A DNA stretch of 64,000 bases from Lepidodermella squamata (GCA_047495785.1 JBLDXI010000020.1:682001-746000); one strand, 5' to 3'; shown: positions 3,301 through 55,686, counted from the stretch's first letter. Translations and numbers: made by a program. Notes: generated by a model from the sequence alone, not told the origin.

Positions 3301-3521
3301 GCGTTCTTCCGATCTCTGATCACGTGACCATTGTGGAGTGGAATCAAGCTGAGAACTGCATAGTCTGAAATGAGTAAAAAAGGCTTTAACTCTGATTTCC
3401 TACGACCAAATCGCTCCAATAAAATGATCAGATGAACTCTTCCAGGCATTTTTTTCGGGCAAAATGTCAACTTACCAAAAATTAAGTTGCAGATCAGCAA
3501 TTTTATTATGAGGAAATGCAT
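359..3521 (-). CDS. Mucin-like, Ser/Thr-rich single-pass type I membrane protein with a possible SEA-like juxtamembrane domain (multi-exon; 3' end may continue below 359)
   Basis: Hydrophobic N-terminus MHFLIIKLLICNLIF. Long S/T-rich tract with many N-x-S/T sites. GT-AG introns join ORFs 1662-3521, 1387-1617 and 359-1360 in frame. TM segment WVLPVVIVIGVVVLLLVYVVVTGACVL is followed by KGYR. A donor-like AG|GTGAGT sits at ~362. Confidence 0.7.
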
Positions 3522-6500: not shown

Positions 6501-6666
6501 AGTTGAGATGTTTCATGCTCCACAAAACAAATTGAATAGCAGGGAGTAAGTACCTGAAGTCACATATTACTATATGATACATTGTGTGATCACCTTTTGC
6601 TATGTGCATGACTTATCCGTACAAAAGTATTGGAGAAAAAAATTAGAACGCTCGAGTGGTCACACA

Positions 6667-6697
<31 letters not shown>

Positions 6698-6700
6698 GGG
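6667..6700 (+). repeat. Short interstitial telomeric repeat (TTAGGG)n with variants
   Basis: AGGG-TTAGGG-TTTAGGG-TTAGGG-TTAGGG-TTGGG read directly from the sequence. Confidence 0.9.
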
Positions 6701-7187
6701 TCACAATGTAACTGTGATACGCACGAAGTTATAGAGGAAAGCAATTTGAGTACGCAATTTACACGACCTGTGGCTGAAGAGAGGCGTTCCTTCGCTCGGC
6801 CTTCATTTTGATAATAGCGTCGTGTTTGTCCCGTTCGCACTGGAAATTCAGCGTGAAGTAGCAGGCAGCCCGATCTTCGATGGGAGCAGGTTCCACCACT
6901 GGGTGCCCTTCGCTGCTGGCCTAGGGCGAGCCTGCACAACGGCTTGACGTACTTCCCAGTGGCAGCGCTTCGAGTGATGTGGGTTGGTTCTTGACTAGCA
7001 ACGAGAGGCCTCGGGGTCTCTCAAAATCCCTGTTGCCCCAGGGTTGTGGCCAGATGGACCAATCGTTAGCCTTGCAGATTCACAATCTCGCAATCTCAAT
7101 ACACAATTTATTTCAAGAAGCCTTGGGGGGTTAAGCCAAGTGATGGGAAAAGCCGAAAATTATGCAAATTCGGCGAAAATTTCCATG

Positions 7188-7208
7188 GTGACCTGTGACC
7201 TGTGACCT
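7188..7208. promoter_or_regulatory. (GTGACCT)3, i.e. two overlapping DR1-type nuclear-receptor elements upstream of NDUFAF5/Ras
   Basis: The minus strand reads AGGTCA-C-AGGTCA-C-AGGTCA. It lies ~220 bp upstream of a 5'UTR splice donor at 7424. Confidence 0.4.
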
Positions 7209-7674
7209 GACTGAGCCGATCGGCGCGACGCGGACGAATCGCTGACAAAATCTCTGGCACGCGAAAGCCGCATTTCTGATAATAATATTAAAATTAATTT
7301 ACTCATTAAACTTTTGCACTGGAAATGCTGCTTTTTGTAAATGACCTTCGCGTCCTGCCGACCGCGAAAAAATGCGGTTCAAAAAGTAGTTTTTTGTTCG
7401 AAGTTTTCGAAGTGGGTTAGTAGGTAAGGCCGATCGTTTAGTTGAGGAAAGGTTCAGACTGCAATTCATCGAGGTTCTAAAGTTGTGTGTTGCGTGTATC
7501 TATAATTCCATTTAATTTTTAAACTCCAGTCTTCTCGCGGACATGGAGTGATACATAATTTAACTCTGCTGTCATTGATGTTATCCGGATAATGTACTCG
7601 TTCGTCGTTGGTTGGAGAAGTTGTCATATTTCGTCTGTTCTCATTGACGTTTTTAGCTGGTTCCTGATTTATTA

Positions 7675-8709
7675 ATGTCACTTTACTTGGCTAAGGCATT
7701 ATCATCACCATTTGGCAATCATACTTCGAGATCATTGAGAAGACTGAAATCCACAACCGCTGCCCCTGCGCAAAAGATCTTCGATCATGAGAACAAACAG
7801 AACCAACGTAGGATCGCAGCTATAAACGCTGCTAAGCAACCCAAAGGAGTCGAGACTTTCGATTATCTTAAGAATGAGGTCGGATGGCGTTTGGCCGACC
7901 GCATATTTGATGTAAAGAGAACGTTCACTCATGGACTGGAAATTGCTGCTGGTAGGGGTCATGTTTCTCGACATCTGGATAGTGACGCCGTCGATTTCAT
8001 TTACCTGGTTGATCCGGTTAAGGAAATGCTTGATCAGCGATCTAAGCCCAAGGAACTTAATGTTGCCCACCAAGACGTTCTTGTCGGTGACGATCGATTT
8101 CTCGGATATTTGCGTGACTCCAGTCTTGATCTGGTCGTTTCATGCCTTTCGATGCATTGGGTGAATGACTTACGCGCTGCATTTCGTGAAAGCCTGCGTG
8201 TTCTGCGGCCTGACGGAGTATTCTTAGGAGCTATGTTTTGCTCGGACACTCTATTCGAGCTAAGATCTGCACTGCAGCAAGCAGAAATGGATACACGCAA
8301 TTCGTATACTGCAAGAATATCTCCGTTTGTTAGGCCCGAGGACATTGCTTCCCTGCTAAATCTTGCGGGGTTTAATCTTGTCACATTGGACTGTGACGAA
8401 TTTCGTATAGGTTACCCTTCAGCCATGGAGCTCATGCGTGATTTACACGGGATGGGTGAACAGAATTGCGGCATAAATCGCCGCCTTAATTTAACTAGAC
8501 CAATCTTGAAAACGGCGTGTGACATTTATCGAGAAATGTACTCCGACTCAGCCGATGGCTCGATACCTGCCACTTTTCAAGTTGTTTACTGGATCGGGTG
8601 GAAACCTGATCCGACTCAGCCTCTTCCAGCGAAACGAGGCTCTGCGAATTTTTCTTTGAAAGACATCGGGAAATTAACTGGCGATGAACTGCCTTTGAAG
8701 CCACTATAA
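7675..8709 (+). CDS. NDUFAF5: NADH dehydrogenase complex I assembly factor 5 (SAM-dependent arginine hydroxylase), intronless CDS
   Basis: Mitochondrial-type presequence. Family motifs [61 protein letters not shown] and [28 protein letters not shown]. Confidence 0.93.
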
Positions 8710-8777
8710 GAAATACTGTTTATTCTAATCATTTTTTGCTAATTAGTCATTTTAAATCGTTGAGTCTCCCTGTTCGC

Positions 8778-9891
8778 ATGTCTATTGGTGAGTATAAAAT
8801 TGTCGTTGTTGGAGATGGCGGAGTAGGAAAAAGTGCCCTAACTATTCAGCTGATAAAAAATCAGTATGTTTACATTGAAAAATTGCTAAGAACTGGAACA
8901 CATTATTTTCTCTAGATTCGTCGAAGAATACGATCCGACCATCGAAGATTCTTATCGGAAACAAGCAGTTGTCGATGGAACTACCTGCGTGTTAGGTAAA
9001 CGAGCAATTTTCGAGGCAATCCTGAATGTCCTGACTTCTTTTAATTACAGATATATTGGATACCGCGGGTCAAGAAGATTACAGGTAACAATTCTATGTT
9101 ATTTAAATAGGCTAATTGGTTCTAAGGATTTCTCGCTGAATAAATGACGAAGGTTTGATAGCTAGTTATCACCATTGCGCTAGTTTTCGGGCGCTGAGTT
9201 TCTCTTTACCGTAGATATAGCTTTTTTGTGTCAACTAAGCATAATTTGAATTCAGTTTGTTATTTTCACTGATGTTTTGTTAGAAGAAGTTCATACTTTA
9301 CGGAAACTTGACAGATTTCGCTTTGCTATTTCTTACAGCGCTCTCAGAGATCAGCATATGAGATCTGGCGAAGGTTTCCTTTGTGTATTCGCTGTCAACA
9401 ATGCAAAATCATTCGAATCAATACCAGCATATAGAGAAAACGTAATATAATCGTCCCGCAATGGTTTTTGTTAAAATAATTTTCTCTTTAGATCAAGCGA
9501 GTTCGTGATTCAGACTCAGATCGAATCCCCATGATCAGTGAGCTGATAGATTATTTCTTTGAAAAATCATAATTTTTATTTTGTTCAATAGTCGTCGGCA
9601 ACAAAATCGACTTAACAGCACGTGTTGATAGCTCCAGAGCCGCAGCCTTGGCAGCTTCTTACCAATGTCCGTATGTGGAAACATCTGCGAGAACTCGCGC
9701 AGGGGTTGAAGAAGCTTTTTATTCCCTCGTTCGTGAAATCCGAAAATATGTAAGTTCTCAATTTTTCGACGCAGATAAACAAGAAATTATTGTTAAATTT
9801 GAATTTCTAGCGAGACTCGGCGCCAAACAATCGCAAGGACTCGAAACCTGGAAAGCGGCCAAAATCTGAGAAAAAATGCTCGCTTTCTTAA
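8778..9891 (+). CDS. Ras-family small GTPase (7 exons) with C-terminal CAAX (CSLS)
   Basis: Spliced translation: [45 protein letters not shown].../[29 protein letters not shown]...VGNKIDL...[24 protein letters not shown]/...KKCSLS*. G1-G5 boxes and the Ras effector loop YDPTIEDSY are intact. Confidence 0.93.
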
Positions 9892-10774
9892 GGAGATGAA
9901 TCTAAACAAAACTTGCCAGTACGCTTTAATATTGTTGTTAATTTCTGGGGAACTTTCGATATTACGGCAAGTGCTTCTCAGTATTACCTGATTGCATATT
10001 TTCAAGCGAGACAATCTGGTTGAGCAACGCAGTCTGATCACTGGTGGGCGATTGATGAAGGGAACTGCACTATTTTGTTCTTTATCTGTTCATGGCCTGT
10101 CGAATGTTATTCCGGCATAGCAATTTTAAAATTCATCGTTATTTATTGTGTGATTGTTCACTTCATACTACGAAAAATCTACGAAGCCTAGAACATATGT
10201 AAAAAATTATTTTCCTCTGACCAATATTCATTTTCTTATGCGATCAAATATATGTATCGGCATTTTATTATGTAACTTTCCATTTTCTGCCAACTTGATA
10301 AACGCAATAGCATGGCTTGAGGGCACTGCGTACTTTCCTCGTTTCCTACCGCTTACTTTCCAGCTCTGTCGGGATGTTGCAATACTGAAGAGATAAGATT
10401 TTTTCGTGAAAAAAATGGAAAATAAAAATGTGAAAGGTGAAAATGGAAAGGCCTCCTTGTTTGGCAATTGAATGGATGGCGTCTAACTAGAGTTTTGCTC
10501 CGCGTTTTTGCACCGCGACATTCATTTTATCACGTTTTTAATAATATTTGGCGCCATCGGAATTCGCATCGCGTCCATTTCATTAGACCGGGAACGTCGC
10601 TAAGGATTCACGCGCTCGATTTATTGATCGTTTTCACATCATTCCATAATTCTATTTTCTCTACGGTTGCGTGTGAAAGTTGTCTAGTCAGCTGTCAACA
10701 CGGACATGCGCATATTGACGTGAAAAGATGCCAGTCGTAGAGTGATGATAATGAAAATACAAGGCGCAACAATG

Positions 10775-13554
10775 TTAGAAAATCAGTGGGATTTTTCTAG
10801 CCTCAGGTGTTATCATAGCAGTGCCAGCTTTGCATTGAAATGCTTTTCCGAATTCCTCCATGAGCGCAACAGCGCCATTAACACTTGGGGAAAGGACATT
10901 GTACGAGTTGGAAAACAAAATGCAGTGAACTTACTGGATGAACTCAGGCATAACTCCACCGAAAATAGTACGCCATGCATAAGAGTAACTAGTGTAATCT
11001 GCGCAATGGCTCTAAAAGTTGAATAACAAGCAATAAAAATCCGCAGAATAGTTTTGAACTAACCGATGCATAGGAGTAGAAAAACATTTGCTCCGAATTT
11101 CCATGAGCGATCGTGGGTAGCGCCTTTTCGGTTATCCTTTTCTCAGCCAAGTACCGCTTGTAAGCCTAATAACCGAAATAAAAAACCATGAAGACCGATG
11201 GGACTAAAAACCCACCGTGTAAGCTTGTCTCAAGCCTCCGGTTTCAGCTATCGCGAAAGTTGAATACGTCGTCACATTCACATGTGGTTTCTTTGTTCGA
11301 CAAAGTTAGGAAAACTTGAAAAGCCGCAAATATGACCTACCAATTCGGCTGGCACAATCGTGTCATAAAAGTCGATTACACTTTGTTTGAGGGGGTTATA
11401 ATTGTCCCAAGTTTTCTGCGTCCACCAGCGAGTTTTCGCGTAGTTGGCGTCGTATAGTTGGCCTAAAATATTTCATATTAAAAACTATTTCGAAGAACCC
11501 TTCTCTTCATACCATCTTCGTCTATTGCTTTGAGCAGAGTCGAAGCTATCCACGAGCCAAGACCGCCGAAATTCAAATAAGCCGGGTAGTTCGGTGAGAC
11601 TAGCGGCTCTTGTAGAATCCCAGCCGGTATCAACACTTCATTCCACCTCGCGTAGTAGTCGATATGCACTTCATATAACTCGGTCCTCCAATGGTCGTAA
11701 GGGTTCGAGCCTTTCGTAAGCTGCCGAATTTCCTGTTGGCGCAAAATTTCTGTGAGTGCCTTGACGTTTGCAAAGTGATCAGTTGACGTAATTGAAACGG
11801 CGCCGTAGATCGCTGTCATTTCATTCGCAATCGCGTCGTCATTGATCCACGATGCTGGTTTCCCGATTTTGAACTGTACCTTGGCCAGCTTGGCAAGTGC
11901 TGCCGTTCTTGTATCATCGTCCATCCATTTCAATTTTGCTAATTCATCAGTGAGGGATTTCCTCACCATTTGGCTGACCTCTTGAACTGGCTTTTCCTCA
12001 TCGCGGCGGTAGAATTTCGCGACGTACAGGGCGCTGAGCGTTTTCGGCATCGCGTAGTCAACATACGACATACACAACTGCCAATCATCCGGGAACTCGT
12101 TGGCTTGGTGGAAAATTGCGAGATACGTTTGATATAGATGATTGTACTCGTAGTTCAAGTCCGGCATCCAATAGAAAGCGATACGGAACGCGAAAAAATT
12201 GTTCATTTTACGTCTGAAATAAGGATCACTCGTGCTAAACGAGCGCAAAATCTGCGAAACTGCCGACGAGTAGGAGTACGAAGCCCGGCGCAAGAAGAAA
12301 TGCTCTACTATCGGGGTGTCTCGGTTCAAGCGAAACTTATTGTCAGTGTAAACTCCGATCAGATTTTCCCAATCGACAAAGCTGTTTCCAGGTTGATCGC
12401 GGAACGCGCTGTAATTGAACACCTTGTGACTATTGCTCACATAGTTGCCGTAAACCTGACTGAGCTGTTGAAGATGAAATGAACTAGTTATTCATGGGAT
12501 TTTTGGGGCAATTTTATAAAAATACCATAACAGGCGTTCGAAACCTGGCTGTAACATTTATTACGTCATCTGCAAACTGATTGATTCGAGCTTGAACAGC
12601 CCGATCTGTCGTATTGGTCCCGTTATCCCGGGCCAAAAAAGTTCCCAGGGTTTGCAGGAAGGTTCGGAACGTCCTAGTTTTCTTGGTATCCAGTCCAAAC
12701 ATGTTTTGCCAGTGGAAAATCGGACTGCTATCATGAGAAATTTCCAGCAAATTTTTTGTTACATCATTAGCCCGTGGCACGGGTTCAAGGCGGAAGAACA
12801 CAAAATTTTGGTCAAGAGACGTGGCTCGCATTGCAGCCTGCCAGTCGAAATCGCTGACACGAGATGGGTCCGATACATACCAGGCTGTACCGAGTTGCTT
12901 CTGTAGCCTGGATATGAGCGGGTTTGGATTATTGCGAGTGTCGTAGCTCATCGCGCGTTGGTATTGATTGATGCAAGCCTGATAGAAATTGTTCACCATG
13001 CGAGCTACTTCGTACATGTGACCCCACTGGGTTCGAAGCGGCGGTGAAGCGATGATGTCTTGCAAGCGTTCTCGATTCCGATCATACATCGTCGTCAAGA
13101 CTTGAAAAGTTTTCAATTGTCATTTTTATAAAAATTGACAAATTTCCCGAAAAGTTACCTGAGGTTTCCGATTCGTAAGCTTTGAACGGATGCTGCCAGG
13201 CGAAATTTCCACAGGCTCTGTCGTAGAAATTTTCGCATGGGTCTATAGACTCGTCCATGTTACCCATCAACCACGCAGCAGCTTCCATGCATTCCGCGCT
13301 TACGCACCTGCCTTTGATTCTAGCCGCATTATTAGGCACTAAATTATTGAATATAAGCGATTATATTTGAAGTGTTAATTATATAAGGGACATGTACCGA
13401 CGTAATTGGCGAAATATTCCGAGTGCAAGACCCCAAAAATGATCACAAATGGTACCAGTAGGGCACTGAAAAATGTCTTTATTGTCAATACGTTTTTCGA
13501 AGCTCTTTCCTCATACCTGGCTATCACGGCGATACATTCGGATCTGCTCAGCAT
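10775..13554 (-). CDS. Neprilysin/M13-like type II membrane protein A (subtype 1), predicted catalytically inactive
   Basis: Short N-terminal tail and TM segment, then C.S.EC...DPCENFYDRACG, WMDDDTR.AA..K, N...PAGILQ, LNFGGLG and the C-terminal F.C motif. HExxH is replaced by STLLK (11529-11543) and ENIAD by FAIAE. The exons join without stops. Confidence 0.85.
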
Positions 13555-13863
13555 TTTCGGCAAATTATGAGCGGAAAACTTATTTTTATTCGACGAGTTC
13601 AAAGATGAAAACTCGGTTATACTGTTATACCAAAATGTTGCGTCGGGCTCTCGATTTCCTAAATTTATTCAGAATTTTTAGATATTTCACGCGCCGGACC
13701 TGCACAGTTTCATGCGGGTGGGATGCAGGTTGTCATGCTTGAATTACAGTTACAGCAAAAACATATCCTAACCTAAATTTGAGCGTGTTAATGGTCGAGA
13801 TTTCGCTCTTCAACCGTGAGAGGTGCTCAGTACAACTTTCAACCCTAACCTGCAGATCGGCTA

Positions 13864-16800
13864 ATGGACTCTGCAACGGCAACTATAAGTGCCACAGGCG
13901 ATGCTGTTCGCATTCATATCGCTAACCCGGTAAGAAAAAAGCTTTGGCTAAAAATAAGGCAACTGATTTTTTATTATGCCCTAATTATGGACATTTTTAA
14001 AAAGATCCAACAATTAGAACATTTTTCAACTTTTATCAGGATGCGCCAACAGTGGACACTAGCAGTGGGAGTCCGGTTCCAGGCGCTGAACCGCAAATAC
14101 TATCGCCGCCGCAAATCGACATTTTCCCCCTCGCATCGGGCCTGTCCAGATTCGGTGTCCTTTTCAGGCGAGAAGTCATCTCGCCAATTCAGCGTTTTTT
14201 CAGCAACGCGTCTGAAATTAAGATCGAGCCACCATCGTTACCACACTCGCACAGCAGTTTTTCTGTGCGAGAATATGGCCTGATCATTCTAGCATTCGCG
14301 CTTGGAATAACGGCTGTCGCTCTCATAATTTCAGTTGGCGTCGATCACTCGCACGTTTTCGCCAACATTATTTCACCGCCAGTTGTTGGAAATGACGTTT
14401 GCGTCGACTATAATTGCTACAAATCGTCAGCGTTGATGCAAAAGCGGATGAACACGTCGATTTCGCCGTGTCACAATTTCTATCAATACGCATGCGGCGG
14501 CTGGATTTCATCGCAACTGCTGTCCGACGACCGACAAGAGCTGACAATCATCAGTCAAATGATGCGAGACAACGTGCATAGGTTGAAAGACGTGATTCTA
14601 GAAGAGCTCGACGATTATCGCGACGTTTCATGGGCCTACGAGAAAAAGGTTCAGAGTTACTACAAAACTTGTATCGACGCGTATACATCAACAATTGTCT
14701 CCATTTTGGCCAACCCACTTCTCGACGAAATTCGAAAAATGGGTGGCTGGTATGTCTTGGGTTCATACAGCTCGTTCAATCGAACCCAGGCCCACGCTAA
14801 TGTTCTTGGCCACGATAATCTAGTTGATGTTTTCTTCTATTACGATATCGAACCTCTGGATCAACAGCATCTATACCATTTCATCACAGTTCGTTCACTG
14901 AAAGGAACCATTTCAGAAAATTAATTTTGTTTTATACAGATTGAAGAAGATTGGATGTTGCCACTGCCGTATCTTCGATGGTCGAGAAGTGAGGTATATA
15001 GGATTCATTTTTAATTTTTTAACCGACAGCTCATTCTCGAATAACTTAGATGGTAAATGCTTACCGGGAATTCGTGCGAAAAGTTGGCGATCTTATTGCG
15101 AGGGATGCCTCTGTCAGAGATGATCAATTGAGCTTCCGTCTTGATACCTTTGTTGATGACGTCACTGCCGTAGAGCGAGCTCTGGCGAAAATTCAACGCG
15201 TATGCAAGTTGTCTTCAAAGCATTTTTCAATATTTTCCTTCTTTTAGGACAACGAAAAAGAGATCTCGAATCCCAAGTCGACTGTCCGTTCTATCGCACA
15301 GATGCAACAAATGTACCCAGGGGTACTCAGTAAAGCATAAAATTGAACTAATTTTAACAATTTCCGTGTATTAATAGTTCCGCTGGCTGTACTATTTCCG
15401 AGCCTGTCTAGCCGAGGCGGACAGTTCGGCGCTCAACTCCCGGACAAGTGTGATAGTCAAGACCCCTAAAATTCTCAAAGCTGTCTCGGACCTTGTTGGC
15501 GGCACGACGTTTACCCGCCGCCAGTTGAACAACTACCTTGTCTGGCGGTTGGTTTACGCCAGGCTGCCCGAAATGCCCTATCGTTACAACCACCTTTGGC
15601 TGGACTGGTCGGAGCGAGTTCGAGGACGCACGCTGAAATACCAACCGATTTGGTCGGTTTGCTTCCAACGCGTCATCAACTACATGTCAGATGCAGTGGG
15701 CGGGTTATTCGCTCGTAATCATTTCACCCACTATGATAAGGCGGAACTTCACCAAATGGTCGAAAATACGCGAACCTCTGTTATAAACGAAGTTCAGAAA
15801 CTACCTTGGATGTAAGTGTTTGAGCTACCCTAAGAGCATTAGTAACTCAATCTAACAGGGATGACTCGACCCGATCGAATGCTACTGAGAAACTGTACCA
15901 CGTTATCGAAAAAATCGGATTCCCTGATCACATGGATACCGAGTTGAACATGCAAAATGCCTTGGATTATCTTTATATGAACGTAATACATCTGATCATC
16001 TATGTAAACTTCGCATAGCTTTTATTCAACATTTCCAGGTTGAGATGACCGATTTCGATCATTTCCAAAATTCGCAAAATTTGCGACAGCATTGGCGCAA
16101 ACAAATGGTCCAAATTTTCAACGACGGACGTGACTGGTACAGCGACTGGAGAGAAACGCCAATCTATTCAACCAAGGCGACTTACTTCTATCCGTGGAAT
16201 GAAATGATAGTTCCAGCTGGTTTACTCCAGTTTCCCATTTATTCCGCCATAAATCCAACAATGTACCGCGTTCAAACCTATGGCTCAGTTGCAGTTCGAC
16301 TCGCGAAAGCTTACATTTTTGCGATTGATGAGCGCGGTTCTTGGTTCAGCAAGTTCGGGGACTACCCCGATGACTGGTGGTCAAACCACACCTACTACCG
16401 TTATTTGCCCCTTAAAAAATGCCTCAGCGATTTCTATTCCAAGGTAGAGACGAAGCCTGTAGCTATCGATGGTGAACCGCAGCCGGTAAGCGTAAATTTT
16501 GGGTTGTATTTCCTACGTAAAAAAATGTACATTATAAAAGCAAAAGCTTGACGATGCAGATATTTACACCATGCAAGCAATCGTCGATATTGGGGCACTT
16601 AGGAATGCATTCGTTGCGTACAAAAGTCCAGATGTTCAAAACGATCCAACGACGCAGAAGGAGACAATGATTCCCGGAGTTCCAGCTTCTTCAAGAGATG
16701 AATACTTCTTCCTGTCCTATGCCCAGGTTAGAATTAATCTAATCTTATTATTTTTGGTTTCGAAATATTCTAAATGTTTCATAGACAATGTGTGCAGCTC

Positions 16801-16964
16801 GAACTGACAAGAAAACAGCCTTGAACATGGCGATAATGCATTGGCTACCAGAAGAGCAAGCGATAAACAGCGCATTGGCTCAACTGAAAGAATTCAGCGA
16901 CGTTTTCAAATGCCCAGTTGGAACGCCGATGAATCCGAGAGACCGATGCGAAATGATTTTCTAA
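13864..16964 (+). CDS. Neprilysin/M13-like type II membrane protein B (subtype 2), predicted catalytically inactive
   Basis: Exon 1 is 13864-13929. TM segment YGLIILAFALGITAVALIISVGV, then CVDYNC...SPCHNFYQYACGGW, NNYLVWR, WNEMIVPAGLLQ, FFLSYAQ and FSDVFKCPVGTPMNPRDRCEMIF*. HExxH is replaced by KAYIF (16306-16320). Confidence 0.87.
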
Positions 16965-17198
16965 ACTTTTTACTGGTTCCCTTCCTAAATGACCCCGTGT
17001 AATATCGTCTGGCCCATATTTAGTTTTTAGTGGAATAAAAAATTTATTTCCATAAGCCGATTTTGAACTCAACAACCCCTATATAGGTTAGCTTCCATGA
17101 TGCTGCTCTTGATTTTTTTTTTCTTTAAGCTTCGAATCACAACAGAGCTATGAACAGTTATTAACGTTAACGAGGATGGTTTTTTGAGGCGCATTTTC

Positions 17199-19973
17199 TC
17201 AGAAGATTACAGCCAGTTGCTCGGGCGGGGGTACCATTCGCTGTTTTGCTTCGCACGCGAAAACCTTGGCGAAATTACTGTACTGAGCAACACCGCCATC
17301 AACGCTACGTACAGATACAAAAAAATCAAGTCGAGAAGCACTTAGAGTTCAAGAAACTTACTGCATGAAAGTTGGCATGAATCCAAGAAGTCTGACGTTG
17401 TTAATGGCAGATTCGCTGGTCCAAGAATCACAATGGCCCTGTAAAGCATGAGACTCAGTTTTCAATATTGGCTAATCAAGTGACAAGCAAACTTACACCA
17501 GCGTATGCGTAGTAGAAGTTCTTTTCGATGTTTCCGTGTGACAACAGTGGAAGCTCCTCCACCTCGGAAAGCACAACTGAGAAAAATTAAATGAAATAAA
17601 TTGGTTTGACACGGATAAATCTCACCATCATCGTCCTTGTCAGCTTGTCGTTCCATATGTTTCTGGTAAGCAGCATGAGCAATGTGAATTCCTCCAGTTT
17701 CTCGAATACCATACGGAACGTAAGAATCCACATTGATGCGTTGTTGCTGGTTTAATCAAACAAAATAATTTTAATTCGATTAACAGAGAATAGTTGCTTA
17801 CGATGACATAGGGAGTAGTAGTGTTGTAGTAGATGGTAACGGCTACTTTGAGCTTTTCGTAACTTTCCATCGTGGCTTTGGACCACAGCGGATTTTTATT
17901 GTCGTGATTTTCGTCCATAAGTTGACCCATCTCATCAATAGCTTGGATCATGGCACTTGCGATCCAACTACCAAAAGCGCCGTAGTTCATATAGGCCGGG
18001 TAACGTGGGTGGAAGATGGGTTCTTGCAAAATGCCAGCTGGGATGAGGATTTCGTTCCACAGGGCGTAGTACTCGATATGGGTATCATACATTTCAACGC
18101 GCCAATCGTCGATAGGATTGAATGCATCGGGGCCGTCCTTCAATTTGCGCAGATCTTCGTTGATCCTGACTTGGATCAATTGGTTGACGTTGCCAAGATG
18201 GTCGTCCACCTTCAGGTTGATCTTATAATTGGCAATTTTTTGACATCTCTCATCTTAATTTCAAAATAGAAACTTACGCCTTTGTAGTGGCGTTCCATCT
18301 CCTTAGCGATTTCTTCGTCTGAGGTCCAGGTTGAAGGCTTGCCGATCTTGAACTGAATAGCCAACAATTTGCGCTTGACGTTATCCTTTGTCTTCTGATC
18401 CATCCATGTGTAGGTATCAACCGCTTCGAGCATTGAAGCGTTCAAGTTATGTTGGATGCGACGAATAGCACGTTCACTCTCGTCCTGGAAGTACTCTGAT
18501 ACGTAGAGAGCAGACAGTGCCTTCGGCATGTCGACATTCATGAGCTCAAGGCATCGCTCCCAATCTGGCGGGAATTCAACTTGCTTAAAGGCGAGGCTGT
18601 AGTACTCGCGGTAAAGGTGATTGTACTCGTAGCTCAAATGCTGGAATAAATTCATCATTATTTTATATTATTTTGTATTTATACAATTTTACCGGCATCC
18701 AGTAGAAGGCGATGCGGAAAGCGAAGTAATTGTTCATTGAACGCTTGAAATCGAATTCATTCGATTTCTTTGCTCTCATAAGAGCAGCCAGGGCTTCCTT
18801 TGTGTACATGATGGGCGAGTTGACGTGCTCAACAACCATTTGATTGCCAGTCAGGGTCAGGCCAGAGTAGGCTTTCACGAAGGCGTCCAAGTCCATGCCC
18901 GTGCCAACCGCGGCTTTGTAAGAAGTCCATTCGTAGGTTTTACGGTTGTTTTCATTTGTACGATAAATTTCAGCGACGTGAACAGCTGGCTCCAAAATGC
19001 TGTTGATGTAAACAACATCTTCGACGAATTGGTTCAGTTTCGACACGTAGTTCTTCTCGTCGAGGCCGTGGTCACGAACCAGCAGCTTGCCAATGTCCTT
19101 GACAACAGTTCTGAAAGCAAAGTAAGAGTCCCAGCCTTCGTGATTCTGAGCCCACTGGAACGACGGCGATTCGTCGTGCAAGAATTCGATCAAGTGCTTG
19201 CTTTTCTCGCCTGGTGCCAAGGTTGGTTGCATTTTGAAGATGACGAAATTTTGATCTTTCGCAGTCAATTGAAGCGACAGCTCCCAGTCGTAGTTGTTGA
19301 CGTTGGTGTTGGCATCAACGACCCACCATCCCTGACCGAGTTGCAGCTTAATCTTGTCGATCAACGGGTTTTTACCCGGTTCATACTGATACGCCCTTTG
19401 GTATTGATCGATGCAAGCGGTGTAGTAGTAATTCGCTCGTTTCGCCGTGTTGTCCAGCGCGCCCCATTGGCCGGCTTTGAACGGCGTTTGAACAATGCTG
19501 TGCAGCCGCATTCTGTTGACTTCCTTCATCTGCGAAAGTACGTTAGCCTCGCGGGATGACGTCGACGAGACTGGGAAGCGTTGCGAATAATTGAAGCACG
19601 CATGATCGTAGAAATGCTCGCAGGCGTCGATTTTGTCGTTGATGTTGCCACCGAGCCATATCGCTGCGTCGAGACATTCCGGCGTTATGCAACGGTTCGC
19701 AGCCTCGGTAGCCGCACCTTTCATTAAATTCGTGTAAAATATAACATTTTTTCATCAATTTTTTTCTTACTGAGATCGGCAGATAAATCATTGTGATACA
19801 CGGCCAAACCAGCGATAGCTCCGGTAAAAACGATGCTGAAAATACGAAAAATGATGATACTTGAGTAAAGCCCGAAATTGTAATATTAACCCGAAAATCA
19901 CAGAGATCCACTCTCGAGATGTCAAAAATCCGCTGACCTTCTGCACGGAAATCGTTACGTCAAGAGAAGACAT
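17199..19973 (-). CDS. Neprilysin/M13-like type II membrane protein C (subtype 1, paralogue of A), predicted catalytically inactive
   Basis: Shares MNN(Y/F)FAFRIAFYWMP, MPK.LSALYV and WNE.LIPAGILQEP with gene A, plus the N-terminal intron phases. HExxH is replaced by SAMIQ (17943-17957). Confidence 0.87.
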
Positions 19974-20522
19974 TATTCGAGCTTAACGCCTAAACGCCAA
20001 TAAGGAAGTGATACTGTCTAATTTTTTAGTTGATAATTGGGTATAGGAAGGGTTCAAAGTTGTCGGTGGAATTTGTCGGTTTAATTTCAGCGAAGTAGAC
20101 CCGCCCCTTTATCTTCCCGTTTGGCTCTGCCGTTTTGTTGGCTTAGATGTAGGCGAGCGGCGTTCTGTTTTATCACATTCAACTTACACGTGAATTGCGC
20201 GTTTTTTTTCGAACAAAGATAACGAAGAACGCAACGGCGAAACGAAAAATAACCTGCTGCGTGTTAGATAAAAGGGCGGCCCAGTAAAATTTGACGCGTT
20301 AGCTCAACTTTATCTCCGCTAATTGCAGCTTGGACTTTGTACAACTGTCTTCTCGCTAATATAGCCAAAATTGATAAAGCAACGCAAAACTGCGACAGTA
20401 TTTGCTCTCTGTTCCTCGAAAAAATTCTTCCGGCCGCGCCACATTGGTTCATCCCAGTTTGAACTGACAAAAATATATCAAGTCGATCTTATACTTTTAG
20501 GTGGCATAAAGGCTTTTGAAAA
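19974..20522. promoter_or_regulatory. Putative bidirectional promoter of M13-like genes C and D with clustered GATA sites and GC boxes
   Basis: Seven WGATAA sites (either strand) at 20031, 20109, 20170, 20217, 20266, 20310 and 20372. Inverted composite motif CCGCCCCTTTATCT (20101-20114) / AGATAAAAGGGCGG (20266-20279). Confidence 0.6.
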
Positions 20523-23430
20523 ATGGCAGTGAACGGTGACAGTGTTCGCATTCAAATTTCCAAAGTAAATTGAAATCCTTTTGTAAACGTGCAAGGCATC
20601 ATTTAAACATATTTCAAGGATGAGGGTGCTGATAGCGGCGAGAACAGGACGTCGATCGGTTCCACATCCGGGAATTCTTTTCAGGCGTCCAACTTTTTGC
20701 AGGGCCAACTTGGAGCGTTATCCAACAAAAGCCTCAGCCTTGCCGGACGGCAAGTAACTTATCGTGAAGTCATCTTCATCGCCGTTACAGTCATCCTTGG
20801 TGCAACAGCGCTGGGTCTTCTGATTAGCACAAGTAAGTATCGTGTTGCTAATTCATCGCTATCGAAAATCTTAATCTAACCTGTTCACAGTTATGACTGG
20901 TCAAGAACTAGACTCTAAGAACGAGAAGCGGCACTGTGTTGACTACGACTGCTACAAGTCAGCCGCTGAGATGCAACGCAAGTACAACGCGTCCATCGAT
21001 GCTTGCGACAACTTCTATCAGTACTCATGCGGTCAATGGGTCAGTAAGCAAAAGCTGCTCGGAAACGAACGTCAGCGAACAATTCTAGGCGAGCTGGAGG
21101 TTGAGAACTTGAAGCGGTTGAACGACGCTATCATGGGTGACGTCGATCCGCTCCGCCGCGTCGACTGGGCTTTCGAGCACAAACTGCAGCGCGTCTACCA
21201 AACCTGCTTGGACCAATACCAAATGACAAATACTTACCAGGACAACAACCCGGTTGTAGCCGAGATCAACAAAATGAATGGCTCGTACATTTTCGGACCT
21301 TCCCTATTCGACCCGTCTAAATTCAACTGGGCTGTGGCTCATCGTGAAACTCTTGGAACTGATAACTGGATTGACGTAAATTCGACAATTGTGCGATAAT
21401 GAAAAATATAATACATTAATTTCAGGTTCTATTTTTTTGGGATATCGAACCATGGGATCAACAGCACTCTGCCTACTACATCACGGTAAGGCTTACAGCA
21501 CTTTCATCTCTCTTATTAGTTGAATAAATCGAAATCTTAGGTTGGGGCTGACATTACCCCGTTCCCATTCTGGAAATGGTCCGATGCGGTAATTTTCTTC
21601 CATTAACCCAGTGAATCCAATTTAATTTGAGTATTTCCAGCTCCTCCCCGAATACAAAACCTTCCTCACCAATGTTGCTAAGCTTCTGGCCCGTGATGCT
21701 ACTGTAAACGACAAAAACCTGAACCAACGCATTACCGACTTCGTCAACGACGTCATCGCCGTCGAATCCGTCATTGTCAAGGCTCAGCAAGCGAATGAGG
21801 TTGAACTTCAGGGCGGCCAGCCGTCTTATTTGATGACCCTGGGGAGACTGCAATCGTCCTATTCTATTGCCTCCGGTTTCAGCTGGGTCCAATACTTCAA
21901 GTCGGTCATGCAGGAAACGACGCGACCTATCGATAGCTTGACACTGACAGCCGTTAAAACGCCCAAAATTCTAGCTGCAATCACCTCAGGCTTCAAGGCT
22001 GGAATCTTCGGCCCCCAACAGTGGAACAACTACCTAGTTTGGCGTTTGACCTTCGCCTGGCTTCCCGATATGTCCTTTGAATACAACCACCTATATCTGA
22101 GATGGCTTGCGGCACTGAATGGCGAGGCGACTGAATACAAGCCAAGCTGGACTTACTGCATGGAAAGCACCCAACGATACATGCGCGACGCCCTGGATGG
22201 TGTCTACGTCCGCCGCCATTTCACTCGCCTCGACAAGGATGAAATCAACGCATTGTCTGAGAACCTTCGTACCTCTGTTTCCAAAGAAGTCGCAACTCTT
22301 GACTGGATGCAAGTTTCAGAATCATTCTAAATCAGCGCTTCTTAACGTTTTTCATTATTTCAGGGACGAAGAAACTCGCAACACCGCGTCAGAAAAAGTC
22401 GCTGCGACAATGGAAAAACTCGGCTTCCCTGATGCCTACTATTCGGAAATTTCACTCCAGAATGTGCTGGACTTCGCCTACAAGGACATCAATATGACTA
22501 CCAATCACTTCACAAATGTGCAGCAACTGCGCCAGCACCACCGCAAGGAGTTCGTCGACATGTAAAAACCATGAGTTTTTATGTATATGGCATAAAGACA
22601 TTGAATTTCCCAATAGATACACCTACGCCCGCGACCCAGCTGCTGATTGGCGCGAGACTCCGTTGTACTCAACGCGGGCCACCTACTTCTACCCGTGGAA
22701 TGAGATGATCGTACCAGCCGGTCTCTTGCAATTCCCGATTTTCTCTGCCGCCAATCCGGCCATGTACCGAGTTCAAACATACGGCTCAACTGGTTTCTTG
22801 CTTGCACGCGGCTACCTCTACGGTCTCGATGAATCCGGCAGGTATTTCGACAAGAACGGCAACTACATTCAAGACACGAAAGATAACACCTGGTGGAGCG
22901 AGACTTCGAAGAACAACTACGTTAGCAGGAAGCAGTGCGTCACCGACTGGTACCAGCAGGTCCAAACTGATCTCTTGACGTTGGACGATGGCACCAAGCT
23001 GCATAAAAAGCTTCAAGACCCGGCTACCTACGCTAGGCGAGCAATTGTTGACCTCGGAGCCCTGCGAAACGCCTACACAGCTTACCTCAGCCCGTCTGTT
23101 CAAACTGAAGACTACGACATGAAAGAGCTGTATTTGCCCGGAGTAACTGCTCAATCAAAGAGGGAATACTTCTTCCTAGCTTTCGCTCAGGTAAATGATA
23201 TAATCTAATGGCCATTTCAAAAATTCCGTAAATTATTTTAATTCCAGTCTCACTGCGCTGTTCGCCATGATCAAGTTACTTACAATTTGATGAATGAGCA
23301 ATCGCAGTGGCTGCCTGAAGAACTCATGGTCAATAACCTGCTGATGCAATTGCCTGAATTCTCTGACGTTTTCAAGTGTTCAAGTGGATCTAAGATGAAT
23401 CCTGGCAACGTTTGCAAGTCGCTATTCTAA
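20523..23430 (+). CDS. Neprilysin/M13-like type II membrane protein D (subtype 2, paralogue of B), predicted catalytically inactive
   Basis: Exon 1 is 20523-20564 (MAVNGDSVRIQISK). Shares DWRETP.YST.ATYFYPWNEMIVPAGLLQFPI and MYRVQTYGS with gene B. HExxH is replaced by RGYLY (22807-22821). Ends FSDVFKCSSGSKMNPGNVCKSLF*. Confidence 0.87.
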
Positions 23431-26580: not shown

Positions 26581-28438
26581 ATGGCTCTTGCTATCGGAGG
26601 TGAACGTACTACTGGTGCCACAGTCCGCACTCAAAACGGTAAGCATTTTCAATATTGGTCAATAATTTTGAAACGTATTTTGTAGTCATTGCTGCTACTG
26701 CCATCGCCAACATCGTGAAAACCAGCCTTGGGCCGGTTGGCTTGGATAAAATGATGGTCGATGAAGTTGGAGTAAGTTGTCTGAAAACTTTTGGAGGATT
26801 GAACATTGAATATCTAATACTTCTCAGGATGTTACAATTACCAACGATGGAGCCACCATTTTGAAGCTACTGGAGGTCGAACATCCCGCGGCCAAAATTC
26901 TGGTCGATCTGGCTCAGCTACAGGATCAGGAAATTGGTGATGGAACTACATCTGTAGTGATTATTGCTGCTGAATTGCTGAAAAATGCCGAAGAATTGAT
27001 TAAATTCAATATTCACCCTACTACTATCATTTCTGGATACCGTCTCGCTTGTAAAGAGGCTTGCCGTTATATCCAGGAACAGCTCACTACTGAAGTCCTC
27101 GAATCCAACACCGATCTTCTGCTGTCTGCGGCGAAGACCAGCATGGCCAGCAAGCTCATCAACACCGACTCTGATTTCTTTGCTAACATGGCAGTTGAGG
27201 CTTGCCTCGCCGTTAAAATCCCGGATGCCTTCAAGCCAAGACAGGTGAGTGAGAAATGGGTTCGTATACGGGGATGAAAAATTCTTGTAATTTTAGGTGA
27301 AATATCCTGTCAAGTCGATCAATATTCTGAAAGCCCATGGCAAGAGTGTTCGCGAAACTCAGTTCGTTCGCGGTTACGCTTTGAATTGTACCGTTGCCTC
27401 ACAGCTGATGCCAAAGTCTATCGTTGGGGCCAAGATCGCTCTCCTGGACTTCAGCTTGTCAAAGATCAAGCTACCCCTTGGAATCCAAGTCATCGTCAAT
27501 GATCCTGAGAAGCTCGAGGCTATCAAGCAGCGCGAAGCCAATATTACCAAAGAGCGCATCGAGAAGATCTTGTCCGCCGGAACCAACGTTGTGTTGACCA
27601 CGGGTGGCATTGACGATCTGTGCCTGAAGTACTTCGTCGAGAAAGGCGTCATGGCTGTTCGTCGCTGCAAGAAGGCTGATCTGAAGCGTATCGCCAAGGC
27701 CACTGGTGGACATTTGCTGGTTTCGCTGTCGAATATGGAGGGCGATGAGTCCTTTGACGCTAGCTTGCTAGGTGAAGCCGAACGTGTTGGACAAGAATAC
27801 GTCGGTGATAACGAGTGCATTTTCATCCATGGAACCAAAGCTCGCAAGGCTGCGTCGATCATCATTCGTGGTGCAAACGATATCATGCTTGACGAGGCTG
27901 AGCGGTCGCTGCACGATGCTCTTTGCGTCATTAAGCGAGTTTTGGAATCCGGCACCGTTGTCGCTGGTGGTGGTTGTGTTGAAGCTGCCGCTTCTGTCTA
28001 CTTGGAAAACTTGGCCACTTCTCTGGCCAGCCGCGAACAGCTCGCCGTTGCTGAATTCGCCAATGCATTGCTTTGCATTCCCAAGCAGCTGGCGGTCAAC
28101 GCCGCTTTGGATGCCACTGATTTGGTTGCCCGCCTGCGCTCTGCCCACTACGCTGCTCAGGTAACTGCTCTTACTGACTTCTCATCCCGTTATTTATAAT
28201 TACCTATCACTTTTAGACCAAGCCTGAACAGTCGGGTATGAACAAGTGGTTCGGCTTGGACTTGCAAACTGGCACCATCCGTGACAACCGTGCTGCCGGT
28301 GTTTTCGAGCCCGCCATTTCGAAGATCAAGAGCCTGCGCTTTGCCACCGAGGCTGCCATTACTATTCTTCGCATTGACGACTTGATCAAGTTGGAACCGG
28401 AGAAGAAGGGCAGGGGCCGTGGCGATGAGGATTATTAA
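26581..28438 (+). CDS. TCP1: T-complex protein 1 subunit alpha (CCT1)
   Basis: [64 protein letters not shown] and [24 protein letters not shown]. Five short introns. Confidence 0.96.
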
Positions 28439-50395: not shown

Positions 50396-52155
<1,760 letters not shown>

Positions 52156-52906: not shown

Positions 52907-54880
<1,974 letters not shown>

Positions 54881-55686
54881 TAAAATTCATTGCGATTTCC
54901 GTTTTTTTACAAGAAAGTGGTCGCGTAATTGCGAAAAATCGTGCGCTTGTTTACTTGCTTGGCTGGTGATGTAAGGCTTAGCCACATGGTAAGACGGCGA
55001 AAGATTATATACCACTACTGCTACTACAGCTTTGCCCGAGTGCACACGCTATTTGTGTAGGTGCCTTCATATACAACAAGATGTGAAAACACGGCCAGCG
55101 TAGCAAACACGGGCCTGCTCAACTCGATTAAATTTAATGATCTATTAGAGAAGCGTAGGCATCATCCAACACATGTGGCCTAAATTGTGATGCGTTCTCT
55201 TTTCCGACTCTAATAAATTCTCTGACATATCATTGTCTGTTGCTAATAGTAAGCCCCTGGCTCATTATTTCCAACGGAACCATCGTAATTAAATGGCTAA
55301 ACTCTCTTGATGGCCTCAATAAATTTCAGTATCGCGATATATTTCTTCCATCATAGCCTCGATGATATGTCCCGAGCGGCACGACACGAGCATAAAAAAT
55401 GTTGTAAATTTTCGTCTAGTAAATTAAAATATTTCTTAACTATCGCAGACTGTGCTATATTTAATAACTGTTCAAGTCAAATGATAACTAGTGCCTGAGA
55501 ATGACCGACACCGTTGATGTTATTATTGTTTTGTTGTATTCGACAACACACTTCCTTCACAAAACATCTATGATATGCAAATCATTATGAGAAACATTGA
55601 TTGAAAGATGAAGTTTTTTGTGTATAAAAAGGAGAGAAGTTTTTACTAAATTTCTTGAATTTTGTAGATCTTTTTTTACCGTGGAA

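What the first reader, a model, noticed from the sequence alone, without database searches (positions are those of the whole stretch)
10775..23430. Duplicated head-to-head cassette of two catalytically dead neprilysin subtypes: candidate two-component pseudo-peptidase system
Seen: four intact M13-fold type II membrane genes arranged <-A B-> <-C D->. A resembles C and B resembles D far more than the partners resemble each other, so the divergent pair was duplicated as a unit. It kept its geometry (ATG-to-ATG gaps of 309 and 549 bp) despite heavy divergence. All four lack HExxH (STLLK, KAYIF, SAMIQ, RGYLY), the third zinc ligand Glu of ENIAD (F, Q, Y, R), the NAFY substrate motif and the C-terminal His/Arg of the HSP...R motif. 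The structural Cys and PAG(I/L)LQ core are retained. Established: these residues are essential for M13 catalysis, and single inactive neprilysin-like proteins are known (e.g. Drosophila Nepl genes). Inference: obligate co-expression of two non-enzymatic subtypes suggests a heterodimeric cell-surface receptor, peptide or ligand-binding protein, or uptake complex. I do not recognise such a paired system as described.
Basis: partly seen in the sequence, partly recalled or inferred. Interest (0 to 1): 0.9.

Follow-up and report, generated by a model that had tools for sequence, protein, structure and literature searches.

The report
Paired dead neprilysin-like membrane genes
Four intact, expressed genes for neprilysin-like surface proteins that have lost their enzyme machinery sit as two head-to-head pairs, an arrangement kept in a distant relative; this suggests, without proving, that the two subtypes work together.

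Summary
Window 10775-23430 carries four intact, intron-containing M13 (neprilysin/ECE) type II membrane genes laid out <-A B-> <-C D->. They encode 782, 853, 779 and 823 aa. A pairs with C and B with D, each clade at SH-aLRT 100. All four lack HExxH, the third zinc ligand, the NAFY Asn and the C-terminal His/Arg.

- C and D are transcribed and spliced in three RNA-type libraries.
- An unnamed relative on a 36-kb metagenome contig has the same four genes in the same order and orientation. Protein identity is 47-63%, synonymous sites are saturated (pS 0.79-0.90) and pN is 0.25-0.35, so selection is strongly purifying.
- Loss of activity is not new to this locus. Both subtypes nest in a well-supported bilaterian clade in which 32 of 33 sampled members lack HExxH. 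It includes molluscs, annelid, nemertean, brachiopod, amphioxus, priapulid and flatworms, and its members are auto-annotated "ECE-like".
- The head-to-head subtype pair is seen only here and in the relative.
- Functional coupling has indirect support only: conserved geometry (309 vs 306 bp), partner-matched evolutionary rates and pair-wise RNA detection. A heterodimer is untested.

I read this as a new variant of a known kind, of moderate interest.

The parts
10775..13554 (-). Gene A. A/C-type dead M13 type II membrane protein, 782 aa, 9 exons. Short cytoplasmic tail of about 26 aa. Signal anchor at aa 27-44 (13423-13476).
   Evidence: Pfam. Paralogue-guided splicing. Intact CDS. Orthologue A' is 60% identical.
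11529..11543 (-). Former HExxH site of A, now STLLK. The NAFY site at 11655-11666 reads HIDY. The ENIAD site at 11243-11257 reads FAIAE.
13555..13863 (.). A-B divergent intergenic region, 309 bp from ATG to ATG. Candidate bidirectional promoter.
   Evidence: The orthologous spacer in L001 is 306 bp. No conserved motif is detectable.
13864..16964 (+). Gene B. B/D-type dead M13 type II membrane protein, 853 aa, 10 exons. About 100-aa cytoplasmic tail starting with a conserved ..GD(S/A)V.I.I motif. Signal anchor at aa 101-121 (14274-14336).
   Evidence: Pfam. Splicing guided by D. Intact CDS. Orthologue B' is 63% identical.
16306..16320 (+). Former HExxH site of B, now KAYIF. The NAFY site at 16174-16185 reads KATY. 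The ENIAD site at 16574-16588 reads QAIVD.
17199..19973 (-). Gene C. A/C-type, 779 aa, 9 exons. The mRNA 5' end lies near 20015, marked by a SMART cDNA adaptor.
   Evidence: Spliced contigs of X2, X3 and X4 give six of the eight introns as joints. The 17439-17496 junction is set by a loose end whose letters lie at 17408-17437, and 17305-17361 is inferred. Intact CDS.
17943..17957 (-). Former HExxH site of C, now SAMIQ. The NAFY site at 18069-18080 reads HIEY. The ENIAD site at 17699-17713 reads YGIRE.
19974..20522 (.). C-D divergent intergenic region, 549 bp from ATG to ATG. The C cDNA 5' end is at about 20015. The D cDNA 5' end is at about 20491. A spliced-leader acceptor TTTTAG ends at 20500.
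20523..23430 (+). Gene D. B/D-type, 823 aa, 9 exons. About 64-aa cytoplasmic tail. Signal anchor at aa 65-86.
   Evidence: All 8 introns are seen as joints in spliced contigs, including a GC-AG intron at 22309-22363. Intact CDS.
22807..22821 (+). Former HExxH site of D, now RGYLY. The NAFY site at 22675-22686 reads RATY. The ENIAD site at 23038-23052 reads RAIVD.

Best explanation
SHOWN. The locus encodes four non-catalytic members of the M13 (neprilysin/ECE) fold. Each is a type II membrane protein with a large ectodomain. They come in two anciently diverged subtypes: A/C has a short tail and has lost one disulfide, and B/D has a long conserved cytoplasmic tail and keeps all ten cysteines. 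Each A/C-type gene lies head-to-head with a B/D-type gene across 0.3-0.55 kb. The pair was duplicated as a unit, and the whole cassette is kept under purifying selection in a second species.

INFERRED (most likely mechanism). Each divergent pair is driven from a shared bidirectional promoter, so one subunit of each subtype is made in the same cells. The ectodomains keep the closed M13 cavity and bind a small peptide or other ligand without cutting it. The former active-site strand and helix is the best-conserved block in both subtypes, which fits this. The two subtypes then act together at the cell surface as a binding, sequestering or receptor unit, most simply a hetero-oligomer. In that unit the B/D partner would supply the cytoplasmic tail for trafficking or signalling. 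A/B and C/D would be two diverged versions of the unit, possibly with different ligands or tissues.
For: - Dead catalytic sites are confirmed against active M13 proteins and human neprilysin.
- All CDSs are intact.
- C and D are spliced and present together in RNA-type libraries X2, X3 and X4.
- X3 also holds 43% of the A-B words. X2 holds C and D but less than 5% of the A-B words, so detection goes pair by pair.
- The same gene order and orientation occurs on metagenome contig L001: D' 5729-8479(-), C' 8917-11523(+), B' 11740-14879(-), A' 15186-18070(+).
- All eight genes are retained although pS is saturated at 0.79-0.90 and pN is 0.25-0.35.
- The A-B spacer is 309 bp against 306 bp in the relative, although its sequence is unalignable.
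- Synteny breaks on both sides of the NDUFAF5-Ras-A-B-C-D block.
- Partners evolve at matched rates. dN is 0.31 for A and 0.30 for B, against 0.48 for C and 0.44 for D. Ortholog path lengths are 0.63/0.56 against 1.16/0.98.
- The ex-active-site block is the most conserved. The invariant fraction there is 0.67 in B/D against 0.29 overall, and 0.43-0.48 in A/C against 0.26 overall.
- There is precedent for a surface M13 pseudopeptidase acting without catalysis in Gone early (PMC4242634), and for two dead metalloprotease paralogues forming a surface heterodimer in ADAM1/ADAM2 (PMC11266112).
Against: - There is no direct evidence of physical interaction or of same-cell expression, because the RNA libraries are bulk.
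- No conserved unpaired cysteine exists for a covalent dimer.
- No motif is shared among the four intergenic regions above chance.
- Only two genomes carry the subtypes, so 'never unpaired' rests on n=2.
- Rate matching rests on two pairs and could reflect shared expression level or regional effects.
- Members of the same dead clade in Macrostomum and Owenia are not paired with another M13 within 10 kb, so the clade as such does not need a linked partner.
- No heteromer made of two M13 subunits is known to me.
Confidence: 0.4

Rival explanations
1. The four are independent pseudopeptidases and the layout is a historical relic. An inverted tandem duplication of one dead M13 gene made the head-to-head pair, and a later segmental duplication copied it. 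Each protein now works on its own or as a homodimer, for example as a ligand trap or adhesion/communication protein like Gone early. The arrangement persists only because small blocks and bidirectional promoters are slow to break.
For: - The tree is exactly what two successive duplications predict.
- The neighbouring NDUFAF5 and Ras genes are also still syntenic, so part of the conservation is plain microsynteny.
- No shared regulatory motif is detectable.
- No cysteine is available for a covalent heterodimer.
- Dead-clade members elsewhere are unpaired.
- The known M13 assemblies that I recall (my own knowledge, not checked here) are homodimers or Kell-XK.
Against: - The pair survived a very old subtype split (cross-type identity 23-30%), a second duplication and a speciation with saturated dS, with no loss among eight genes.
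- The spacer length is kept at 309 against 306 bp.
- Partner-matched rates and pair-wise RNA detection are not predicted by full independence.
Confidence: 0.4
2. They regulate the genome's many active, secreted neprilysins or their peptide substrates. They would act as membrane-tethered decoys that compete for neuropeptides, or as inhibitors or chaperones of active M13 enzymes, with no need for an A/B complex.
For: - Earlier first-stage notes report several clusters of secreted neprilysins with peptide and GPCR genes in this genome (unchecked).
- The pseudopeptidase review lists regulation of active cousins as a common role (PMC11266112).
- The conserved ex-active-site block fits retained peptide binding.
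Against: - No linkage to active neprilysins, peptide genes or GPCRs was found in this window.
- The substrate-anchoring Asn of NAFY and the C-terminal Arg are replaced, so canonical substrate docking is altered.
- The idea does not explain the paired layout.
Confidence: 0.12
3. They are still peptidases that use migrated or unconventional catalytic residues.
For: Some annotated pseudoenzymes have turned out to be active (general knowledge; PMC10211241 abstract, seen). The fold and the PAG(I/L)LQ core are kept.
Against: - All three zinc ligands, the catalytic Glu, the Asp of ExxxD (in A/C it is Glu), the transition-state His and the substrate Asn/Arg are replaced.
- The replacements differ between subtypes, and no compensating His/Glu cluster appears in the motif helix.
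- The same holds for 32 of 33 clade members.
Confidence: 0.03

Closest known systems
Neprilysin / endothelin-converting enzyme family (MEROPS M13; Pfam PF05649 + PF01431)
   Same: Same two-domain architecture, type II membrane topology, PAG(I/L)LQ core and most structural cysteines. phmmer E-values to human neprilysin chains are 1e-19 for the A piece and 1e-13 for the D piece.
   Different: Every catalytic and zinc-binding residue is replaced, along with the NAFY Asn and the C-terminal His/Arg. The A/C type has also lost one disulfide. These are non-peptidase homologues.
Bilaterian clade of HExxH-less 'ECE-like' proteins. Examples: Owenia CAH1786331.1, Tubulanus XP_074652410.1, Patella XP_050410954.1, Branchiostoma CAH1233091.1, Lingula XP_013399075.1, Priapulus XP_014663367.1, Schistosoma japonicum CAX72645.1, Macrostomum PAA64008.1.
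   Same: A/C and B/D both nest inside this clade, which has SH-aLRT 100 (quick tree) or 99 (31 rows; 97 with the long-branch P0119 included) under the mixture model. They share the loss of HExxH, ENIAD Glu, NAFY Asn and HSP His. They sit closest to the trematode members (91 and 97), though all of these are long branches.
   Different: Elsewhere the genes are annotated as single, unlinked loci. Macrostomum and Owenia have no M13 neighbour within 10 kb. Here two subtypes at 23-30% identity are fixed as head-to-head pairs. I found no functional study of the clade in the searchable literature.
Drosophila Gone early (Goe, CG9634) and the Drosophila Nepl genes
   Same: Goe is a type II membrane M13 homologue that lacks HExxH and ExxA/GD. 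It has a long cytoplasmic domain (129 aa, compare about 100 aa in B) and acts at the cell surface without peptidase activity (PMC4242634; PMC11266112). Inactive Nepl proteins are expressed and conserved (PMC2259306; PMC8223033).
   Different: Goe works as a single gene with no reported partner subtype or bidirectional pairing. Orthology with the clade described here could not be tested, because no tool gave me the Goe sequence.
Fertilin (ADAM1/ADAM2), a heterodimer of two inactive metalloprotease-family paralogues
   Same: It is a functional analogue of the proposed mechanism. Two catalytically dead paralogues of a membrane metalloprotease family form a cell-surface heterodimer that binds rather than cleaves (PMC11266112).
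   Different: The fold family differs (M12 adamalysin, type I membrane), the genes are not divergently paired, and binding goes through disintegrin domains. The resemblance is one of logic only.
Kell-XK complex and the ECE-1 homodimer
   Same: These are the M13 proteins known to work as covalent membrane complexes. Kell-XK is covered in the background section of PMC2259306. The ECE-1 disulfide dimer is from my own knowledge.
   Different: Both are catalytically competent. Kell's partner is a multipass transporter-like protein, not an M13 protein. A-D have an even number of conserved cysteines and no candidate intermolecular Cys.

Membership tests
Peptidase family M13 (fold / homology) | Peptidase_M13_N (PF05649) followed by Peptidase_M13 (PF01431) | tested here: met
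   All four genes have pieces above Pfam gathering scores for one or both domains. The order is N domain then C domain in the spliced models.
Peptidase family M13 (fold / homology) | Type II membrane topology: short N-terminal cytoplasmic part, one signal-anchor helix, large ectodomain | tested here: met
   Single hydrophobic stretches of 18-22 residues lie near the N terminus: A aa 27-44, B 101-121, C 22-41, D 65-86. These were read directly from the sequence, and no dedicated TM predictor was available.
Peptidase family M13 (active enzyme) | HExxH zinc-binding / catalytic motif | tested here: not met
   The site reads STLLK, KAYIF, SAMIQ and RGYLY. The orthologues read STIIN, KAYIH, IASVR and RGYLY.
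Peptidase family M13 (active enzyme) | Third zinc ligand Glu in ExxxD (ENIAD) | tested here: not met
   Glu is replaced by F, Q, Y and R in A, B, C and D. The Asp position is E in A/C and D in B/D.
Peptidase family M13 (active enzyme) | Substrate-binding Asn of NAFY, and the His/Arg of the C-terminal HSP..R | tested here: not met
   NAFY reads HIDY, KATY, HIEY and RATY. His is replaced by V, W, F and W, and Arg by H, A, H and M.
Peptidase family M13 (fold / homology) | Conserved ectodomain disulfide cysteines | tested here: inconclusive
   B/D keep all 10 cysteines shared with an active neprilysin-like reference. A/C keep 8 and have lost both partners of one pair.
Bilaterian HExxH-less 'ECE-like' clade | Monophyly with the inactive spiralian, amphioxus and priapulid proteins to the exclusion of active M13 | tested here: met
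   A 33-row clade has SH-aLRT 100 under LG+G4. Under LG+C20 PMSF, with an active outgroup, a 31-row clade has support 99 and the 32-row clade that adds the long-branch P0119 has 97. The careful bootstrap search was not finished.
Gone early (Goe) orthologue group | Orthology to Drosophila CG9634 | not testable with these tools
   The Goe sequence was not retrievable. A word-indexed search from the priapulid clade member returned no arthropod dead M13.
   This holds for 4 of 4 pairs in the two genomes that have the subtypes. No further genomes were found, so n=2.
   C and D are co-detected in X2, X3 and X4. A-B is detected in X3 only. All libraries are bulk, and contigs cannot give expression levels.
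No conserved free Cys was found.

The most novel reading that the evidence does not exclude
The divergent pairs encode an obligate hetero-oligomeric cell-surface complex built from two different dead M13 subunits. An A/C-type ectodomain would combine with a B/D-type ectodomain that carries a signalling or trafficking tail. The complex would bind a peptide ligand in the old protease cavity, giving a receptor or uptake unit evolved from a neuropeptidase. It would be the first two-component pseudo-M13 system, and a clue to the function of the unstudied bilaterian dead-M13 clade.
Probability: 0.25. Interest if true: 0.7.

Novelty: new variant of a known kind. Interest (0 to 1): 0.5.

Why it matters
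Inactive M13 homologues are common in invertebrate genomes, yet the 2024 pseudopeptidase review lists only one with a studied function, Drosophila Gone early (PMC11266112).

This locus adds two things. First, the dead genes here belong to an old clade that spans molluscs, annelids, a nemertean, a brachiopod, flatworms, a priapulid and amphioxus. No vertebrate member appeared among the sampled sequences. That points to a conserved non-proteolytic function that has not been looked for. Second, in one lineage two subtypes are locked into divergent pairs that survived duplication and long divergence with matched rates. This gives a concrete, testable hypothesis that dead neuropeptidases act as paired binding subunits.

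If that proves true, it would show a neuropeptide-degrading ectoenzyme being turned into a peptide-binding receptor or scavenger. If it proves false, the locus remains a clean example of long-term retention of a bidirectional gene pair.

Tried and rejected
1. Decaying pseudogenes. Rejected, because all four CDSs are intact, spliced and transcribed, and pN is far below the saturated pS.
2. Shared promoter motifs. Exact k-mers (7-10 nt, either strand) and blastn-short among the four intergenic regions of both species gave nothing above shuffled controls. At this divergence the test has little power.
3. More relatives to test 'never unpaired'. The exhaustive representative search with the A exon found only the two ORF clusters of one metagenome organism. 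The word-indexed search with the D exon found only the B' exon of that same organism. Two scans of JGI metagenome contigs, one per subtype, found none.
4. Pairing elsewhere in the dead clade. The Macrostomum and Owenia members have no M13 neighbour within 10 kb. Trematode and mollusc loci were not examined, because their genes and introns are too large for the 10-kb flank.
5. Link to Drosophila Gone early. A search from the priapulid member returned mainly bacterial and active M13 proteins. The one ant hit keeps HEVNH. This question stays unresolved.
6. Organism identity. The NDUFAF5 protein has no named hit above 49% identity, and run names are coded. The dead-M13 tree places the genes next to trematodes, but on long branches. 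I leave the organism unnamed. It is a spliced-leader trans-splicing bilaterian with introns of about 50-60 nt.
7. Covalent heterodimer. No conserved odd cysteine exists.
8. Full-length searches, structure prediction and multimer modelling of A-D. Not done, because spliced proteins have no reference and long sequences may not be typed.
9. The careful bootstrap tree did not finish in the time limit. SH-aLRT values from the quick searches are reported instead.

Full report
WHAT IS THERE

The window is eukaryotic, with GT-AG introns of mostly about 50-60 nt. ORF pieces between 10.7 and 23.4 kb hit Pfam Peptidase_M13_N and Peptidase_M13. A tblastn of these pieces against the whole window shows four M13 genes and no others. 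A resembles C at 37-51% per HSP and B resembles D at 45-55%. Cross-type identity is 23-35%.

I built spliced models. For C and D the introns come mostly from public data. Laying four runs on 17440-23430 showed that X1 is genomic and that X2, X3 and X4 are spliced (RNA-derived) contigs. They skip six C introns and eight D introns with canonical ends, including one GC-AG intron in D. C's seventh intron (17439-17496) is set by a loose end whose letters lie at 17408-17437. The last one (17305-17361) was placed from canonical splice signals and reading-frame continuity into the C-terminal exon. A and B were spliced by a paralogue-guided search and by a small spliced-alignment program.

All four give one uninterrupted CDS:
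- A: 10775-13554 (-), 782 aa.
- B: 13864-16964 (+), 853 aa.
- C: 17199-19973 (-), 779 aa.
- D: 20523-23430 (+), 823 aa.

Each protein has one N-terminal hydrophobic anchor. The A/C type has a short tail of about 20-26 aa. The B/D type has a long one (about 100 and 64 aa) that starts with a conserved ..GD(S/A)V.I.I.. motif.

DEAD ACTIVE SITES

I aligned the proteins with active M13 proteins and compared them with human neprilysin chains by phmmer.
- The HExxH site reads STLLK, KAYIF, SAMIQ and RGYLY.
- The Glu of ENIAD is F, Q, Y and R.
- The Asn of NAFY is H, K, H and R.
- The His and Arg of the C-terminal HSP..R are replaced.
- PAG(I/L)LQ is kept.

B/D keep all ten cysteines shared with an active reference. 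A/C have coherently lost both cysteines of one disulfide. No subtype has a conserved odd cysteine.

EXPRESSION

C and D are present as spliced contigs in X2, X3 and X4. Adaptor sequences place the cDNA 5' ends near 20015 for C and 20491 for D. One X3 contig joins a foreign 24-nt leader to D at the TTTTAG acceptor that ends at 20500. This agrees with earlier notes that this animal trans-splices a spliced leader.

X3 also holds 43% of the sampled words of the A-B stretch, roughly its exonic share. X2 holds less than 5% of them. Detection therefore goes pair by pair, but only in bulk libraries, and contigs cannot rank expression.

A SECOND SPECIES WITH THE SAME CASSETTE

An exhaustive phmmer search of 1.84 billion representatives with A's 320-aa exon found only two close hits, at 69% and 46% identity. 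Both lie on one 35,981-bp ENA metagenome contig. Spliced alignment of A-D to that contig (L001) recovers four orthologues laid out <-D' C'-> <-B' A'->, which is the same order and orientation.
- Identities are A-A' 60%, B-B' 63%, C-C' 47% and D-D' 50%.
- The orthologues are dead at the same sites.
- Synonymous differences are saturated (pS 0.79-0.90) while pN is 0.25-0.35, so selection is clearly purifying.
- NDUFAF5 and a Ras-like gene next to A are also syntenic. Similarity stops beyond NDUFAF5 on one side and beyond D on the other.
- The A-B spacer is 309 bp against 306 bp, and the C-D spacer is 549 against 437 bp. No sequence motif is shared above chance.

No other relative of either subtype turned up in the 5.8-billion-cluster collection or in JGI metagenomes.

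PHYLOGENY

I built a 106-row tree from A-D, their four orthologues and 98 single-domain representatives. A+A'+C+C' and B+B'+D+D' are each supported at SH-aLRT 100. Both lie in a 33-row clade, also at 100, in which 32 members lack HExxH.

The named members of that clade are molluscs, the annelid Owenia, the nemertean Tubulanus, the brachiopod Lingula, amphioxus, Priapulus, Macrostomum and trematodes. All are auto-annotated as ECE-like.

A mixture-model tree with an active outgroup supports the dead clade at 99 (31 rows) and at 97 when the long-branch P0119 is included. It groups A/C, B/D and the trematode pair at 97, though all three are long branches.

Loss of activity is therefore ancient and shared. 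What is special to this locus is the paired two-subtype arrangement. The Macrostomum and Owenia members have no M13 neighbour within 10 kb.

WHAT SPEAKS FOR COUPLING

- The pair persisted through a very old subtype split, a unit duplication and a deep speciation, with eight of eight genes intact.
- The A-B spacer length is kept.
- Partners have matched rates. dN is 0.31 and 0.30 for A and B, against 0.48 and 0.44 for C and D. Ortholog path lengths are 0.63/0.56 against 1.16/0.98.
- RNA detection is pair-wise.
- The most conserved block in both subtypes is the former active-site strand and helix. That fits retained binding in the M13 cavity.

WHAT SPEAKS AGAINST COUPLING OR IS MISSING

No interaction data exist and no covalent-link cysteine is present. 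No promoter motif was found, only two genomes carry the subtypes, and the RNA is bulk. A purely historical explanation also fits the tree equally well: an inverted duplication, then a segmental duplication, then passive microsynteny.

LITERATURE

- Inactive M13 homologues are known in Drosophila expansions (PMC2259306, PMC8223033).
- Nepl15 has a metabolic role (PMC7822871, abstract only).
- Gone early is a type II membrane M13 pseudopeptidase with a 129-aa cytoplasmic domain that acts in germ-cell communication (PMC4242634).
- A 2024 review lists Goe as the only studied M13 pseudopeptidase. It describes ADAM1/ADAM2 as a heterodimer of dead metalloprotease paralogues (PMC11266112).
- I found nothing on the bilaterian dead clade or on paired M13 subtypes.

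VERDICT

The genes are real, expressed, selected, non-catalytic M13 surface proteins of two subtypes held in conserved divergent pairs. That they form a two-component complex is a reasonable hypothesis, to which I give about 0.25-0.4, but it is untested. The rival that the layout is a relic is about equally likely. Novelty is that of a new variant of a known kind, and interest is moderate.

Noticed in passing
window 20491-20500: D's mRNA appears to be spliced-leader trans-spliced. An X3 contig carries 24 foreign letters (ending ...GAATTTGATTTGTGTCTA) joined at the TTTTAG acceptor that ends at 20500, 22 nt upstream of the ATG. The letters are not found elsewhere in the window. An X2 cDNA instead starts at 20491 with a T7/GGG adaptor.
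   Followed up: partly
window 22309-22363; L001 12856-12910: D has an RNA-confirmed GC-AG intron right after ..LDWM. The intron at the same position in B' of the relative also starts with GC (GCAAGT). B has GT there (15812-15858).
   Followed up: no
window 7675-9774; L003 12504-14258: NDUFAF5 (a single 344-aa ORF, 67% identical to the relative's copy) and a Ras-like gene are syntenic with the metagenome contig. Similarity ends immediately beyond them. No named NDUFAF5 exceeds 49% identity, so the lineage is poorly sampled.
   Followed up: partly
window 50535-51233, 52913-53713, 53987-54883: Two separate ORFs each carry SRP54 N and GTPase domains, and a third carries the SRP54 signal-peptide-binding domain. 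This may be a tandem duplication or a partial copy of SRP54.
   Followed up: no
P0007/P0021 (Physella), P0008/P0028 (Owenia): Molluscs and the annelid Owenia each carry two diverged paralogues of the dead-M13 clade at unlinked or distant loci. One Logan transcript in the clade (P0012) still has HELIH but lacks the ENIAD Glu. Repeated retention of two dead paralogues in several phyla may be worth a look.
   Followed up: partly
window 1662-3521 (-) and 359-1360 (-): Long ORFs of 619 and 333 aa have no Pfam match.
   Followed up: no
window 27297-28199, 41746-42876, 47706-49271: Ordinary neighbours: a CCT/TCP-1 chaperonin subunit exon, a diacylglycerol kinase, and a bHLH-PAS transcription factor in a 521-aa ORF.
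   Followed up: no
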